DNA of 64,000 nt, taken from Stylophora pistillata (taxonomy: Eukaryota). The position numbers and the translations under genes were made by a program. Shown in pieces: positions 8,028 through 60,797 of the stretch. The stretch spans positions 199,766 to 263,765 of the forward strand of contig NW_019217861.1 of assembly GCF_002571385.2 (NCBI RefSeq). The letters run 5' to 3'. Under the pieces are notes generated by a model, which was given only the letters and a program-made list of their open reading frames with translations, did not search any database and was not told where the DNA came from. The stretch's first letter is position 1. Every line of letters starts with the position of its first letter.

Positions 8028-11000
8028 TTATTCATAGTCTGTGATTTTCAATCTGTCAGCCATTGCCTTAAGAAATTTTCCTTGTGCTTCCACAGTGGCC
8101 TGAAGTTTTTGCATCATTTCCTCTTGCCTTTCCTCTCGCAACTGTAGCTGTTGGCAGCCATCACTAGAGATCCCACTAGATGCGCCGTTTAGCAGCATGT
8201 CCACAAAATCACTTCCTGTTATATCAGTAGCAGATAGAGTGACCCTAAAATGTAAGAGGGGGTTCGAGTTGATTAATAAAACACAGCTGCTGTGTAAAAA
8301 ATAAAAACTAACTTCTTAGTCTCTCTTTGCTATCAACTGAGCTTGGTAAACCTTTATAATTACTGGCCAGGTAAAGGTCACTCAACAAATTCCTTTTCCT
8401 GGAATTTGATCGACAATGCATCATTTTTTGCGGAAGCAAAAATCAGTACATTTACAACCTCCGTTTCCATCTCGCGACTTTGAATTAATTATGTCCCATG
8501 GGCGTGACCACGTATGAAGACTCATTTAGAACGCAGATGATTCACATTGATAAACTTTTCAGTGGAATATAAAAAGAGGATCATGTATGAATCAAAAGAA
8601 GTGGCCACTGACCTGCAAATAGAAAAAAAGAAAGGAATACAAAGTTAACTGCCGAAAGACAATACTTACCACTTCATGAAACTGTTTTCGTTTGGTTTTA
8701 TTTTCAACGAGCTCCTGTAGATCTTTCGAAGAATGAAACTTGGATAGGATTTCATGATGTCGTCAACTAATAGCACTTGGTCTATCAAAGCTCGTAAACT
8801 TGCTGTCCTCTGAATAGACTCGATATCTCCAACCGCCAAACCAACCTATAGTTTTGGAATACAACTACCGTTAAATTTTGGATAACAATCACAGCAACAG
8901 GCTGATGCAATAGTCATGTCCAGTGCCCAGGTCCTCCATAACACTCGTTGGAACGTTAGGGGAAGATAGCTTGAGCAAACTCGCTCAAACTCTGGGTACC
9001 GTGAAGGATTACTGGAGTTTTGGGTCACAAAAGCTTCTTCTTAAATGTACCATTTCTTTGCTGTTACAACGTTTTCTAACTCCAACTGCTACTTCAACTG
9101 CAAATTCCCTTATTATTTCCACTACTAATGCCAAAACCTTTAACCCTTATATTCTGATTTGCTTGTATTTCCTTAACCTTGGGAGCTGACATCGCACTCC
9201 TGTTTTACGGGATATAGAGGTATATATACCTATATAATGACACTCACGTATATATAATAATATTTACATATGTATAATTCTATATAACTGTGTAACTATA
9301 TAAATATGTAACTGCTGATTACATATTTAATTATTAAGCTCTCATATCTGCTAATTATATAATTAGTTGTAAAGCGCTTAATATAGTGAAACTATGGAAA
9401 CATCGAATTCTAGAATGTAATAGCAAAGGCACCAAAAAAATATTTTCCTAAGAAGAGAACACCTGACAATTCTCAATTTAGACTACACACCACGTGTTAC
9501 TACGGGCTAAAGATATCCCTCTCGACTCGCCTTATAGCTAAAGATGGTTTTTTGAACGTATGTCACGCAAGTGGTGGTCTGTATTATAATGGAATAGAGA
9601 ATTGATCTTTTTCATACCAGCAAGTTGACGAGCACAACACTACCCAACAATACGAATGCTAAGAACAGGCAGGTAGTGAGTATTGGCAGAGGAACATATG
9701 GAATATTTGTTCCAGGCACTGTGTTGTTGTTCACAATGTTGTCAACCAACATATTTGAGTAGTCTAATTCACCAGCCAATGTGACGTAGATCTTTGCAAA
9801 AGCGTACCAGAAAGTTGAGAAATTACCCTAAGAGAAAAATAAAACCAAACCATTAAACCGTGTAATTCCAGTCACGAGAAGTACTCTCCATTTTTTAGAG
9901 GGTGAAAACTGAAGCAAAGGGCACCTGTAACAACCAAAAGAAGCAGTGCCTTTTTTGAAAAATTCTTATTGAGCATGAGGCGTTATACTGTATGTGAACA
10001 ATTACGCTATTTTGTACCAATGGATTTTTGTGGTGGCGAGTTGGTTGTGGTGGCGAATTGACTGCAAACCGTTTTTTTTTTTGTCAGCTCCACTCTATGA
10101 AATACTGTCCTAAACAAATTTTTTTCCAATCATCATTAGTTTTTTTAGTAATAAATACGAAAGGATCAGAAATATTCACGAGATCGTTCTAACCTGTTCT
10201 TTTAGCAAGGCATAAAATACCAAGGTGAATCCAGTTAGGGCAATCATGAAAGTGGACATCACTCTCAGAAATGTGCGCAGAACCTCCACGTACATTGTGA
10301 CATACAAACCAAGTCCACCAAAGCGACGAAGAGATAATGTAAAATTTATGTAGCTCAGGAGAAGCCCAAGTATACCAGCTATCCATTGAGTCTTTGTGTT
10401 GTATATATTTCTCTCAGTCATGTGAGGAAGTATGAAAATCCACACCAATACGTACATTACCAACTCTAACAAGTTTGTGATATCCCTGAAGTAGGAGAAC
10501 CGCTGCCAAATCATTTGAATAACTTCCTTGATGAGCTGCACGATCAAAAATGCTAGTATAACATAAGGAACTGTCAACTCAAACGACGATTTGATTTTGA
10601 CACCTTCGCTAGTTGTTTTTTCAGAGGAGGTGAATAAAAAATTGATTTTGTCCCTCTCTATGACAAAGAGACACGAGAGAAGGATGACATAAGCGGCCAT
10701 TACAACAGCGTTAATCAAGGAGACAAACTTCCCCAAAATTAGCCACTTCCATCTCAACAACGCTTGAGTGACACTGTGATTGAGCAATTTTTCTCTTCGA
10801 TGTTTTGCCATGGAAGCTGGACCGAAGTAACTGTGACAATCAGGCCCAGGATCTAACTGAACCACGTTAAATGTGACAGAAAAGTCTTCGTGAGACGGAG
10901 GGTGTGGACTGTAGGTGATGCATTTATCGAGAATAACTTCTGCCACATCTGGAAGTTTTTCGATTAGTTTTCCCATCGGATGAACACTAACAACTGGTGA

Positions 11001-59800: not shown

Positions 59801-60797
59801 GTTGATTAGTATCCCAGATATTTTATCATTACGAAGGCGCCTCCTGCTATTACTGTAATACTCTGTGAGTGGGGCAAAGTTCAAGTAATCCCGCGCTCGT
59901 CTCTACCCTCCCAACCCCACTCCTCTCGGGTTGATTAGTATCACAGATATTTTATCATTACGAAGGCGCCTCCTGCTATTACTGTTATACTCTGTGAGTG
60001 GGGCAAGGTTCAAGTAATCCCGCGCTCATCTCTATCCTCCCAACCCCACTCCTCTCGGGTTGATTAGTATCTCAGATATTTCATTATAACGAAGGCACCT
60101 CTTGCTATAAATGTTGTAGTACTCTGTGAGTTGGGAAAGATTGAAGAAATCGTGGTCTCACCTCCCCTTCCCACACACCCCCAACGCCACTCCTAACGGG
60201 TGGTTAGATGGAAGCTACCCTTTTCATTTCACGTCTGAAATGATATTTCATACTTCAACATATATACATTTACCCAAGCTTTGGTAAACGTAACCATAAA
60301 CTCTCATGTTCAATCCTTTTTAATTCTGTACCTACCAAAATTCAAAGAGCAGAATCGCTTTCTTCCTTTATACGTTTTATTAAAAACCCACAATTTTAAC
60401 AATTTCAATCATGATTGTACAAGTTTTATTTTCAACATTTGAAATTATTTCTTATATTTCAGTCATATACTAATTTTACGATTGGATATTTTTACGATTG
60501 GATAACAGCCATGTAGTTGAGTGGGCCACCCTCACCAAATGAAGTTTACCTTTACCTTTCTACAGAAAAAGGACCAGGCAGGAAGAATTCCAAGATGAAG
60601 ATCTTCTGGGAGACAATGACGGAGAAATTGACGATATGACTTTACGGCTGGACAATTTGACACGAGAAATAGAAAAGTCTAAAATAAGACAGAAGATCCT
60701 CATCGGTGCCACGGACCAACAGAGAGATATCCTGCTCGCTGTAGCCGAGCATGTCGGTGTAGAAGTTAATTTGCCATCGCGTATAAAGATAGAGTGA
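50812..60797 (+). CDS. TRPA1: TRPA1-like ankyrin-repeat cation channel, paralog E, with one in-frame TAG in exon 3 (nonsense allele, young pseudogene or base error)
   Basis: Exons 50812-51233, 52422-52765, 53557-53869, 54204-54531, 55465-55661, 56279-56608, 57121-57958, 58353-58556, 59047-59225, 60566-60797 (3387 nt, phases consistent). TAG at 53718-53720. Pore MTSGEIEY; NLL|IGLAVGDI. Confidence 0.85.
53022..53480 (-). mobile_element. tRNA-derived SINE in intron 2 of gene E (antisense)
   Basis: Head ggttagctcatattgtagagcgccggactg...gggtttaagcccc. Central domain shared with the SINE at 21175-21595. (TTA)n-type tail at about 53022-53053. Confidence 0.85.
54683..54917. repeat. Degenerate (CATA/CGTA/CGTG)n alternating purine-pyrimidine tract
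   Basis: acatacgtgcgtacatacgtgcgtac...gtgcgtgcgtatgtgcgt, in intron 4 of gene E. Confidence 0.85.
56627..57072. repeat. (GACT)n-rich tract forming two roughly 186-bp tandem units
   Basis: caaatgg..actctctgagacgagaatgcaaaa..gttcaaaga.ggtatgt occurs at about 56805-56878 and 56991-57072, each preceded by (GACT/GACA)n. Confidence 0.8.
59679..60208. repeat. 129-bp minisatellite, four copies, in intron 9 of gene E
   Basis: Units start agtatc.cagatatt at 59679, 59808, 59937 and 60066. The first three are near-identical and the fourth is diverged. Confidence 0.95.

What the first reader, a model, noticed from the sequence alone, without database searches (positions are those of the whole stretch)
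8028..60797. Divergent two-subfamily TRPA1-like array: a candidate combinatorial sensory-channel locus
Seen: five full-length genes plus one relic, all with the same ten coding exons and phases. They split by strand into two subfamilies. A/B have exons 3, 8, 9 and 10 of 274, 210, 176 and 217 nt and a TRP-like helix TAxLRxLIDQ. C/D/E have exons 3 and 5 of 313 and 197 nt and a helix xAxLRNKGK. Established: TRPA1 is a tetrameric thermo-, chemo- and oxidant sensor, single-copy in mammals. Inference: an old inverted duplication followed by tandem expansion, with the proteins now far diverged yet retained. This fits a sub-functionalised and possibly heteromeric receptor repertoire relevant to heat/ROS sensing or cnidocyte control.
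Basis: partly seen in the sequence, partly recalled or inferred. Interest (0 to 1): 0.75.

Follow-up and report, generated by a model that had tools for sequence, protein, structure and literature searches.

The report
Coral TRPA1-like channel gene cluster
This stretch of a stony-coral genome holds five neighbouring genes for TRPA1-like sensory ion channels, part of a larger cluster built by repeated duplication; it is a well-kept but ordinary receptor gene family, not a shown new signalling system.

Summary
The observation largely holds. Window 8028-60797 carries five ten-exon TRPA1-like genes: A and B on the minus strand, C, D and E on the plus strand. All 45 of 45 introns are GT-AG, the phases are identical, and the exon lengths are exactly those quoted. 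A three-exon relic lies at 1596-4641. Both N gaps are intergenic.

One correction: E has an in-frame TAG at 53718-53720 in this assembly. Two other samples read TAT and TAC there. An RNA contig joins E exons 2-7 at the predicted sites, so E is expressed.

The window holds half of a cluster of at least 10 genes on one contig. The relic is a by-product of an ~18-kb tandem duplication that also made A and its twin.

The two subfamilies are separate old anthozoan clades. Non-synonymous change is below synonymous change in every pair; dN/dS is 0.15-0.30 where measurable.

Nothing here supports heteromers, heat/ROS sensing or cnidocyte roles. The equivalents of cysteines C621 and C665 are absent. 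A 2026 preprint already notes a large TRPA expansion in this coral.

The scan had not reported the array before. It had reported TAG-at-tyrosine stops on other DNA of this genome (s1-776254).

The parts
8028..15865 (-). Gene A, TRPA1-like, 1105 codons. Exons: 15865-15468, 15033-14690, 13916-13643, 13513-13186, 12956-12751, 12037-11702, 11022-10194, 9827-9618, 8845-8670, 8244-8028.
   Evidence: all introns GT-AG and no internal stop; ankyrin families in exons 1-6, Ion_trans in exons 7-8. TRPA1 chains at E 1.9e-23.
20013..29045 (-). Gene B, TRPA1-like, 1077 codons. Exons: 29045-28720, 27417-27077, 26798-26525, 26143-25813, 25170-24968, 24573-24238, 23684-22865, 21971-21762, 20932-20757, 20229-20013.
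   Evidence: all introns GT-AG and no internal stop. 47% amino-acid identity to A.
32501..40014 (+). Gene C, TRPA1-like, 1102 codons. Exons: 32501-32832, 33744-34087, 34513-34825, 35175-35502, 36280-36476, 36729-37055, 37478-38330, 38753-38953, 39390-39568, 39780-40014.
   Evidence: ankyrin families in exons 1-6; exon 7 used as query against the window's own genome.
41898..49022 (+). Gene D, TRPA1-like, 1092 codons. Exons: 41898-42229, 43166-43509, 43588-43900, 44188-44515, 44602-44798, 45326-45652, 46013-46859, 47219-47422, 47997-48178, 48818-49022. It has Lys where the other copies have the S2 glutamate that aligns with human E788.
   Evidence: for the Glu-to-Lys change. 59% amino-acid identity to C, dN/dS 0.15.
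50812..60797 (+). Gene E, TRPA1-like, 1128 codons including one in-frame TAG. Exons: 50812-51233, 52422-52765, 53557-53869, 54204-54531, 55465-55661, 56279-56608, 57121-57958, 58353-58556, 59047-59225, 60566-60797.
   Evidence: a 2867-nt RNA contig (X16) joins exons 2-7 at these sites, 5 of 5 joints GT..AG. Stranded raw reads (X21) lie on the exons with the first mate on the minus strand.
53718..53720 (+). In-frame TAG in exon 3 of E, at a position where paralogues have His or Tyr.
   Evidence: letter 53720 is T in X16 (21 of 21) and C in X2 (244 of 244), so the codon is TAT or TAC there.
1596..4641 (-). Relic: a partial copy (parts of exons 7, 6 and 5) of the cluster gene at C78:173.5-182.5 kb, cut at both ends and interrupted by retroelement sequence.
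   Evidence: window 1596-1882, 2808-3164 and 3431-4641 match C78:176703-176989, 177817-178168 and 178453-179671 at 99.7, 94.4 and 95.0%; peptide similarity to exons 5-7.
2314..2991 (-). Reverse-transcriptase fragment inside the relic.
   Evidence: RVT_1, E 4.7e-14.
4945..6330 (+). 461-codon reverse-transcriptase ORF of a retroelement. It sits where the relic's copy of exons 1-4 would be.
   Evidence: RVT_1, E 8.7e-38; no match between window 4641 and 6511.
6511..18282 (.). The right-hand copy of a tandem segmental duplication. It comprises gene A with its flanks, and its other copy is C78:185171-197298.
   Evidence: 85-92% identity in four collinear pieces..
153..1597 (.). A copy of the spacer that lies 3' of gene B (window 18269-19935). 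It marks the junction of the tandem duplication, which abuts the relic's broken exon 7 at 1596/1597.
   Evidence: 153-702 matches 18269-18850 at 88.3%, and 811-1597 matches 19142-19935 at 94.2%.
18856..19022 (.). Assembly gap, intergenic between A's 5' side and B's 3' end.
   Evidence: Its flanks are collinear with the paralogous spacer. Not filled.
50029..50204 (.). Assembly gap, intergenic between D's 3' end and E's 5' side.
   Evidence: Not filled.
29046..32500 (.). Head-to-head spacer of 3455 nt between the start codons of B and C.
   Evidence: No Pfam family in two ORFs there.

Best explanation
The window holds five members, plus one truncated by-product, of a tandem cluster of at least ten genes for TRPA1-like cation channels in a stony coral. 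An earlier scan note names the coral Stylophora pistillata; I did not verify that.

Shown:
- Each gene encodes about 1080-1130 residues.
- Exons 1-6 encode roughly 600 residues of ankyrin repeats.
- Exon 7 encodes the pre-S1 linker and helices S1-S5.
- Exon 8 encodes the pore helix, a Gly-Glu filter and S6.
- Exon 9 encodes the gate and TRP-like helix.
- The cluster grew by repeated local duplication over a very long time. The A/B lineage and the C/D/E lineage are distinct anthozoan clades.
- Growth is still going on. An ~18-kb tandem duplication made A and its twin and left the relic.
- The survivors are under purifying selection.
- E is transcribed and spliced as predicted.

Inferred:
- Exon 10 encodes a helical tail.
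- Each product forms a tetrameric, calcium-modulated, non-selective cation channel that serves as a sensory transducer.
- Paralogues differ in stimulus or gating. D has lost the S2 calcium-site glutamate. C/D/E have a rewritten TRP-like helix.
- They do not sense electrophiles through the human C621/C665 site.
- Which stimuli they sense and which cells they act in are unknown.
For: - Gene models: 45 of 45 introns GT-AG with identical phases.
- Family: solved TRPA1 chains are the best matches for exon 7 and exon 9 (E 2.9e-11). They are the only matches, though weak, for exon 8 (E 0.004-0.64).
- Ankyrin families occur in exons 1-6 of both A and C.
- The filter Gly-Glu is invariant in 5 of 5 genes and aligns with human G914-D915.
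- The four calcium-site positions are kept in A, C and E. B has Asp at the fourth and D has Lys at the first.
- Cluster: 11 of the 20 listed own-genome matches to C's exon 7 lie on the window's contig between 89.9 and 257.7 kb.
- The copy at 189 kb is 89-98% identical to A in each of 10 exons.
- Duplication anatomy.
- Phylogeny: careful tree of 52 rows.
- Selection, A versus its twin: exons 3220 of 3318 identical (97.0%), introns 3995 of 4289 (93.1%), dN/dS 0.30.
- Selection, C versus D: dN/dS 0.15. In all six pairs tested pN is 0.23-0.47 and pS is 0.69-0.83.
- Expression of E. RNA runs from three studies hold 0.26-0.36 of the sampled words of a stretch that is 0.40 exonic.
- A Pocillopora gene model fuses exons 1-5 of an A-like gene to a full copy like the 177-kb gene. 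That is the same order and strand as here, so that adjacency predates the two genera.
Against: - In-frame stops occur in the reference in E, in A's twin, and in the copies at 114 kb and 102 kb. Some members may therefore be null in the sequenced colony.
- Channel function, ion selectivity and tetramer formation are inferred from homology only.
- Exon 10 gave no TRPA1 match (0 of 6 hits).
- The stretch C78:120-163 kb between the two halves of the cluster was not examined.
Confidence: 0.85

Rival explanations
1. One reading: subunits of the two subfamilies are co-expressed and co-assemble into mixed tetramers, giving a combinatorial sensory repertoire, and the head-to-head B-C arrangement serves co-regulation.
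For: - Two old subfamilies are kept side by side, with B and C head to head 3455 nt apart.
- Both keep pore and gate motifs that would be compatible in one tetramer.
- D's loss of the calcium-site glutamate would be more tolerable in a mixed channel. That is inference.
Against: - No result here bears on co-expression or assembly.
- The tails (exon 10) are only 26% identical between A and C, and the TRP-like helices differ by subfamily. If anything, that argues for assembly within a subfamily.
- Solved TRPA1 structures are homotetramers (molecule names).
- Tandem retention is the default outcome of local duplication and needs no functional link.
- An earlier scan note on a DEG/ENaC array in this genome left the same idea untested (s1-784475).
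Confidence: 0.08
2. The cluster is largely decaying. Most copies are young pseudogenes or null alleles, and only one or two genes function.
For: - Single in-frame stops in E, A's twin, the 114-kb copy and the 102-kb copy.
- A relic with retroelement insertions.
- A multiply broken copy on another contig.
Against: - A, B, C and D have no internal stop and keep all splice sites.
- E's stop is absent from two other samples, and E is spliced and transcribed.
- dN/dS is 0.15-0.30.
- Each stopped copy has one stop only, and all its other aligned exons are open.
- Earlier scan notes report private stops in unrelated genes of this reference. That points to the assembly or the sequenced colony rather than to this family (s1-776254, s1-786185; not checked by me).
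Confidence: 0.05
3. The genes are true TRPA1 orthologues that work as the coral's electrophile, oxidant and heat sensors, as in bilaterians.
For: - Solved TRPA1 chains are the best structural relatives.
- The calcium site and the gate are conserved.
- The C641-equivalent cysteine is present in 4 of 5 window genes.
- A preprint reports one TRPA1-like gene of this coral as neuron-enriched and lower under heat (passages). Which gene that is I could not tell.
Against: - The position of C621 holds His, Lys or Asn in 5 of 5 window genes. C665 falls in a human-specific insertion, so it has no equivalent in 9 of 9 aligned copies.
- The anthozoan copies form their own clade and are not one-to-one with vertebrate TRPA1.
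- A review states that the cnidarian TRPA1-like channels are uncharacterised (passages).
Confidence: 0.15

Closest known systems
Vertebrate TRPA1 (solved human structures such as 6v9v, 6pqq, 9m8n)
   Same: - Long ankyrin-repeat N-terminus, six-helix channel core, and the G-L-A-V-G-D-I gate followed by a TRP-like helix.
- Acidic filter residue after Gly.
- The S2/S3 calcium-site residues.
   Different: - Vertebrate TRPA1 is single-copy in mammals (general knowledge).
- Here there are at least 10 clustered paralogues that are not one-to-one orthologues.
- No C621 or C665 equivalent.
- C/D/E have a rewritten TRP-like helix.
- The tail gives no sequence match.
Nematostella vectensis TRPA1 / TRPA1-like paralogues (XP_048577386, XP_048577879, XP_032235182, XP_048575718 and others)
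   Same: - Same anthozoan clades. XP_048577386 groups with A/B. XP_048577879 and XP_032235182 group with the 90-114 kb copies.
- Three of them lie on one 15.37-Mb record.
   Different: - No named Nematostella protein fell inside the C/D/E clade among the rows I used.
TRPA1-like gene g25745 of Stylophora pistillata (bioRxiv 10.64898/2026.10.05.756843)
   Same: [quoted passage not shown]
   Different: - The paper treats one neuron-enriched, heat-responsive gene and does not describe the genomic cluster in the passages I saw.
- Its tree is in a supplementary figure that I could not open, so I cannot say whether g25745 is one of A-E.
Birth-and-death tandem receptor families (for example vertebrate olfactory receptor clusters; recalled, general knowledge)
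   Same: Tandem paralogues of very different ages, a recent segmental duplicate, truncated relics, retroelement insertions, single-stop copies, and purifying selection on the survivors.
   Different: - These are large ten-exon channel genes, not small single-exon receptors.
- A review suggests TRP genes may be less prone to tandem duplication (passage). This cluster is a counter-example.

Membership tests
TRPA (ankyrin) subfamily of TRP channels | Long N-terminal array of ankyrin repeats | tested here: met
   Pfam Ank, Ank_2, Ank_3, Ank_4 and Ank_5 matched in 6 of 6 N-terminal exons of C and 6 of 6 of A. The repeats were not counted one by one. About 610-630 residues fit some 16-18 repeats, which is an estimate.
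TRPA (ankyrin) subfamily of TRP channels | Six-helix channel core with a pore loop, closest to TRPA1 rather than to other TRP subfamilies | tested here: met
   Exon 7 of E matches TRPA1 chains at E 4.4e-31 to 8.7e-28, with the best TRPV at 7.8e-5. The nine-copy profile matches human residues 611-893 at E 6.5e-50. Pfam Ion_trans is weak: 38.4, 27.5 and 19.2 bits, and none for two copies, against a cut-off of 25.
TRPA (ankyrin) subfamily of TRP channels | Pore helix, filter and S6 | tested here: met
   The exon 8 profile hits only TRPA1 chains (8 of 8), but weakly, at E 0.0039 to 0.64. It aligns to human 897-956, with the invariant Gly-Glu opposite G914-D915.
TRPA (ankyrin) subfamily of TRP channels | Gate motif and TRP-like helix directly after S6 | tested here: met
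   The exon 9 profile aligns to human 957-1009 at E 2.9e-11 to 7.4e-11. G-L-A-V-G-D-I is invariant in 5 of 5 genes. The helix is rewritten in C/D/E: N-K-G-K occurs in 3 of 25 aligned sequences, and only in these three.
TRPA (ankyrin) subfamily of TRP channels | C-terminal coiled coil | tested here: inconclusive
   The exon 10 profile gave 0 TRPA1 chains among 6 weak hits. The alignment shows a conserved helical-looking stretch. No coiled-coil predictor or multimer model was available.
TRPA1 proper (orthologues of bilaterian TRPA1) | [quoted passage not shown] | tested here: not met
   In the careful tree of 52 rows rooted on a sponge protein, all coral copies lie in a cnidarian clade (44 rows, 99/93). 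The salamander TRPA1 group branches outside it. The root is an assumption.
TRPA1 proper (orthologues of bilaterian TRPA1) | Electrophile-sensing cysteines of human TRPA1 (C621, C641, C665; their role is recalled, their positions were counted in the alignment) | tested here: not met
   The C621 position holds His (A), Lys (B) and Asn (C, D, E). Only the 177-kb copy has Cys there (1 of 9). The C641 position is Cys in 8 of 9 copies and Trp in C. C665 lies in an insertion absent from all 9.
TRPA1 proper (orthologues of bilaterian TRPA1) | S2/S3 calcium site (human E788, Q791, N805, E808; their role is recalled) | tested here: met
   All four positions are kept in A, C and E. B has Asp at the fourth and D has Lys at the first.
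Heteromeric (combinatorial) channel system | Co-expression of different subunits in one cell and physical co-assembly | not testable with these tools
   Only E's expression was examined. No single-cell data or multimer modelling was available.
Birth-and-death tandem gene family | Tandem paralogues of mixed ages, with recent duplicates, relics and purifying selection on the survivors | tested here: met

The most novel reading that the evidence does not exclude
The A/B and C/D/E lineages have stayed neighbours since before corals and sea anemones split because their products work together. Under this reading, subunits with the ordinary coupling helix (A/B type) and subunits with the rewritten N-K-G-K helix or a disabled calcium site (C/D/E type, D in particular) co-assemble into mixed tetramers whose gating depends on the mix. 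The head-to-head B-C spacer would act as a shared control region. A second, separate oddity is also not excluded: the single in-frame stops in otherwise intact copies are TAG at tyrosine codons in three cases, a pattern also noted elsewhere in this genome, so they may have a common cause rather than reflect gene decay.
Probability: 0.07. Interest if true: 0.6.

Novelty: new member of a known kind. Interest (0 to 1): 0.3.

Why it matters
TRPA channels are candidate sensors of temperature and chemical stress in reef corals. One TRPA1-like gene of this species has already been singled out as neuron-enriched and heat-responsive (preprint). A map of the cluster shows which copies are intact, which are recent twins, which have altered calcium-site or coupling-helix residues, and that the human electrophile site is missing. 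That tells experimenters which paralogues to clone and which read-mapping ambiguities to expect (A and its twin are 97% identical in exons). It also gives a clear counter-example to the suggestion that large TRP genes rarely grow by tandem duplication (review passage). It does not by itself reveal a new mechanism.

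Tried and rejected
- Whole spliced proteins were not searched.
What remains is indirect: shared record lengths, runs of neighbouring accession numbers in Porites lutea, and a fused Pocillopora gene model.
- The exon 10 coiled coil gave no TRPA1 hit.
- No tRNA genes and no Rfam families were found in the window.
- Pfam found nothing in 4 of 5 ORFs at 61012-63921, the fifth giving only a sub-threshold zinc-finger match, and nothing in 2 of 2 ORFs in the B-C spacer.
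- Literature: five searches found no paper describing this cluster. I read passages only, of the 2026 preprint, PMC11526382, PMC7850063, PMC4083563, PMC11874183, PMC9145168 and PMC12503276. The last five added nothing on TRPA arrays. The preprint's supplementary tree and tables could not be opened and may already list these genes.
- I considered E to be a pseudogene and rejected that at species level. It stays open for the sequenced colony.
- I considered whether the TAG-at-tyrosine stops are chance. The probability that a random one-letter nonsense change in these genes is Tyr-to-TAG is 0.05-0.075. At least 3 of 4-5 such changes then has P 5e-4 to 4e-3, and this is post hoc.
- I considered that ambiguous letters at heterozygous sites had been turned into fixed or random letters. 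The window holds only A, C, G, T and N, and no simple rule fits the six three-state sites, so this remains untested.
- The copy on contig C473 is a true multi-stop pseudogene and was left out of the trees.
- Trees: of 145 database rows that cover most of exon 7, the quick tree used 117. The careful tree used 40 (30 from the cnidarian side and 10 others) plus 12 copies from this genome. The other rows were left out to save time.

Full report
**What is in the sequence**

Stop-to-stop frames compared all against all and aligned by exon group show five collinear sets of ten homologous coding pieces. Two sets are on the minus strand (A, B) and three on the plus strand (C, D, E).

Choosing splice sites that sit at the same alignment position and phase in all five genes gives models in which 45 of 45 introns are GT-AG. 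The phases at exon starts are 0, 2, 1, 2, 0, 2, 2, 0, 0, 2 in every gene.

Exon lengths:

| Gene | Exons 1-10 (nt) | Codons |
|---|---|---|
| A | 398, 344, 274, 328, 206, 336, 829, 210, 176, 217 | 1105 |
| B | 326, 341, 274, 331, 203, 336, 820, 210, 176, 217 | 1077 |
| C | 332, 344, 313, 328, 197, 327, 853, 201, 179, 235 | 1102 |
| D | 332, 344, 313, 328, 197, 327, 847, 204, 182, 205 | 1092 |
| E | 422, 344, 313, 328, 197, 330, 838, 204, 179, 232 | 1128 |

The motifs it quoted after S6 are also there.

**The gaps**

The gap at 18856-19022 lies 2991 nt upstream of A's start codon and 991 nt downstream of B's stop. The gap at 50029-50204 lies 1007 nt past D's stop and 608 nt before E's start. 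Neither touches a coding exon, so frame continuity is not at issue. The flanks of the first gap are collinear with a paralogous spacer. I did not fill either gap.

**One correction: an in-frame stop in E**

Exon 3 of E carries an in-frame TAG at 53718-53720, where the paralogues have His or Tyr. I laid four public runs on 52300-58200.

- A 2867-nt RNA contig of a poly(A) library (X16) covers exons 2 to 7. It skips the five introns at the predicted places: 5 of 5 joints are GT..AG, within the 2-3 letters that fit either side.
- Stranded raw reads of another study (X21) support the same five joints with 1 to 3 reads each. They lie on the exons with the first mate on the minus strand, as expected for a plus-strand RNA.
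- Letter 53720 is T in X16 (depth 21 of 21) and C in X2 (244 of 244). In both, the codon is tyrosine.
- RNA runs of three studies hold 0.26-0.36 of the sampled words of a stretch that is 0.40 exonic.

So E is transcribed, spliced as modelled, and open in other samples.

**What the genes are**

- Exon 7 of E and of A match solved TRPA1 chains at E 4.4e-31 to 1.9e-23. TRPV chains reach 7.8e-5 at best.
- A profile of nine exon-7 peptides aligns to human TRPA1 residues 611-893 at E 6.5e-50.
- Exon 8 aligns to residues 897-956. Only TRPA1 chains are hit (8 of 8), but weakly.
- Exon 9 aligns to residues 957-1009 at about 5e-11.
- Exons 1-6 of both A and C are ankyrin repeats.
- The filter Gly-Glu is invariant in 5 of 5 genes and stands opposite human G914-D915. 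The gate motif is also invariant.

The roles of the residues below are recalled knowledge. Their positions were counted in the alignment.

- The four calcium-site positions are kept in A, C and E. B has Asp at the fourth and D has Lys at the first. The D change agrees with a separate note on this window (s1-777861).
- The position of C621 holds His, Lys or Asn in 5 of 5 window genes.
- C641 is matched by Cys in 4 of 5 (Trp in C).
- C665 lies in an insertion that none of the nine aligned copies has.
- The tail (exon 10) found no TRPA1 chain (0 of 6 hits).

**The window is part of a larger cluster**

Searching the window's own genome with C's exon 7 listed 20 matches. Eleven lie on the window's contig (C78): the six in the window and five upstream at about 90, 102, 114, 177 and 189 kb, all on the minus strand. 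I fetched those five.

Each holds collinear homologues of at least exons 2-9. Exon 10 was found in the 177- and 189-kb copies only, and exon 1 of the 177-kb copy was not found, probably because it lies beyond the fetched 10 kb.

The 189-kb copy is A's twin.

- Its ten exons are 89-98% identical to A at the protein level.
- The two loci are collinear over 8.6 kb at 91.7-93.2%.
- Exons are 3220 of 3318 identical (97.0%) against 3995 of 4289 (93.1%) in introns.
- dN/dS is 0.30 over 1097 codons.

**The relic explained**

Window 1596-1882, 2808-3164 and 3431-4641 match the 177-kb gene (parts of exon 7, exon 6 and exon 5 with intron) at 99.7, 94.4 and 95.0%. Window 6511-18282 matches the stretch that holds A's twin at 85-92%. 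Window 153-1597 is a copy of the spacer 18269-19935 that lies just 3' of B.

Read together, a block of about 18 kb, running from the middle of exon 7 of the 177-kb gene to just past B's 3' end, was duplicated in tandem. That made A and its twin and left a copy of the 177-kb gene that was truncated from birth. This copy later lost its front part, and it now carries reverse-transcriptase sequences at 2314-2991 and 4945-6330. The order of events is inference.

**How old the subfamilies are**

A profile search of 1.84 billion representative proteins gave 3209 hits at E up to 1e-3 and 227 at up to 1e-30.

A quick tree of 127 rows and a careful tree of 52 rows agree on the following.

- A, its twin, the 177-kb copy with a Pocillopora protein, and B form a clade (7 rows, 100/99). 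That clade lies in an 11-row clade with Nematostella XP_048577386 (100/98).
- C, D and E with two unnamed database fragments form another clade (5 rows, 98/95).
- The 90-, 102- and 114-kb copies and two copies on contig C73 lie in a third clade with Nematostella XP_048577879 and XP_032235182 (13 rows, 98/96).
- A fourth anthozoan clade (6 rows, 100/100) holds Porites, Acropora, Exaiptasia and three more Nematostella proteins.
- How these four clades join is unresolved.
- All sit in a cnidarian clade (44 rows, 99/93), and the salamander TRPA1 group branches outside it. This supports 'TRPA1-like' rather than one-to-one orthology. The sponge root is an assumption.

The strand rule holds only inside the window.

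A 1600-residue Pocillopora model turns out to be exons 1-5 of an A-like gene fused to a complete 177-kb-type gene. That is the same order and strand as here.

**Selection**

Synonymous sites are saturated in five of six old pairs (pS 0.78-0.83). In every pair pN is lower (0.23-0.47). C versus D gives dS 1.9, dN 0.28 and a ratio of 0.15.

Whole-length amino-acid identities:

| Pair | Identity |
|---|---|
| A-B | 47% |
| C-D | 59% |
| C-E | 42% |
| D-E | 43% |
| A-C | 33% |

**The TRP-like helix**

In an alignment of 25 sequences most TRPA1 relatives, including the salamander protein and the 90-114 kb copies, share one form of the helix.

- A, B, their two close relatives here and the Pocillopora protein have L-I-D-Q (5 of 25). 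The Nematostella relative has a similar D-Q.
- Only C, D and E have N-K-G-K (3 of 25). They have also lost the P-N that follows in most sequences.

The C/D/E state is thus the derived one. What it does to gating is unknown.

**What remains of the interpretation**

Nothing I could run bears on heteromeric assembly, on heat or oxidant sensing, or on stinging-cell control. The tails and coupling helices differ by subfamily, which if anything argues for assembly among like subunits. That is inference.

[quoted passage not shown] Its tree is in a supplement I could not open, so I cannot say whether that gene is one of A-E.

A review (passages) says that cnidarian TRPA1-like channels are uncharacterised. 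It also suggests that TRP genes may be less prone to tandem duplication, and this cluster is a counter-example. Five literature searches found no description of the cluster itself.

**Oddities**

- Stops at tyrosine codons. The single in-frame stops in otherwise open copies are TAG at tyrosine positions three times: E exon 3, the twin of A exon 6 (A has TAC), and the 114-kb copy exon 7 (seven of the nine aligned paralogues, the other two having His, and a database relative have Tyr).
- Other stops. A fourth stop is TAA, in the 102-kb copy. A TAG in the 90-kb copy may lie behind a splice donor.
- Chance. The post hoc probability is 5e-4 to 4e-3. Another reports reference-only stops (s1-786185). 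I did not check those.
- Three-state sites. Six sites in E's exons show three states among the reference and two other samples. Five of them change the protein or make the stop. Four fall in 91 nt around the end of S1 and the S1-S2 loop.
- Possible causes of the three-state sites are an assembly artefact at heterozygous sites, an unusually variable loop, or contigs from an unassembled twin. None was tested.

**Verdict**

This is a carefully observed and real tandem cluster of TRPA1-like channel genes. It is larger and more dynamic than the window shows, it is under purifying selection, and at least one member is expressed. It is a new, well-mapped member of a known kind, and its proposed combinatorial function is untested.

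Noticed in passing
window 53718-53720; L005:5119-5121; L003:3483-3485: Three single in-frame stops in otherwise open cluster genes are all TAG at tyrosine positions. For the one that could be checked, other samples read TAT and TAC. An earlier scan note describes the same pattern in an unrelated gene of this genome. The cause is unknown: chance, assembly artefact at heterozygous sites, or null alleles.
   Followed up: partly
window 52640, 53720, 57440, 57495, 57523, 57530: Six sites in E's exons show three different letters among the reference and two other samples. Five change the residue or create the stop. Four lie within 91 nt coding the end of S1 and the S1-S2 loop. One RNA sample (X21) carries both non-reference forms.
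   Followed up: partly
window 153-1597 and 18269-19935; window 1596/1597: A spacer copy abutting the relic's broken exon 7 marks the junction of an ~18-kb tandem segmental duplication. That duplication produced gene A and its twin at C78:186.7-194.5 kb.
   Followed up: yes
window 46512-46583 (gene D exon 7): D has Lys where 8 of 9 aligned copies have the S2 glutamate that aligns with the human calcium-site residue E788. B has Asp at the position of E808.
   Followed up: yes
window 53285-53481 (E intron 2) and 21397-21585 (B intron 8): A very high-copy repeat: summed contig depth is about 328,000 in a DNA-like run, against about 200-250 for the flanks. The two copies in the window are 81% alike. 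Loose read ends there look like a short interspersed element.
   Followed up: no
window 59678-60151 (E intron 9): Tandem repeat of a 129-nt unit, 3.7 copies, 91% matches.
   Followed up: no
P0151 (Pocillopora damicornis RMX46070.1, 1600 residues): This deposited 'hypothetical protein' is a fused gene model. Residues 18-481 are exons 1-5 of an A-like gene. Residues 512-1600 are a complete gene of the 177-kb type.
   Followed up: yes
L006 (G000:C473:146000-155999): A dispersed TRPA-like copy on another contig is a true pseudogene, with several stops of mixed kinds across exons 2, 4, 6 and 7.
   Followed up: partly
L008 (G000:C73:632000-641999): Two adjacent open TRPA-like copies about 4 kb apart on another contig. 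They group with the 102-kb copy in the tree, so the family has at least one second tandem site.
   Followed up: partly
window 61012-64000: Several ORFs of 70-150 codons downstream of E. None has a Pfam family above threshold, and only one has a weak zinc-finger match. They are possibly transposon remains.
   Followed up: partly
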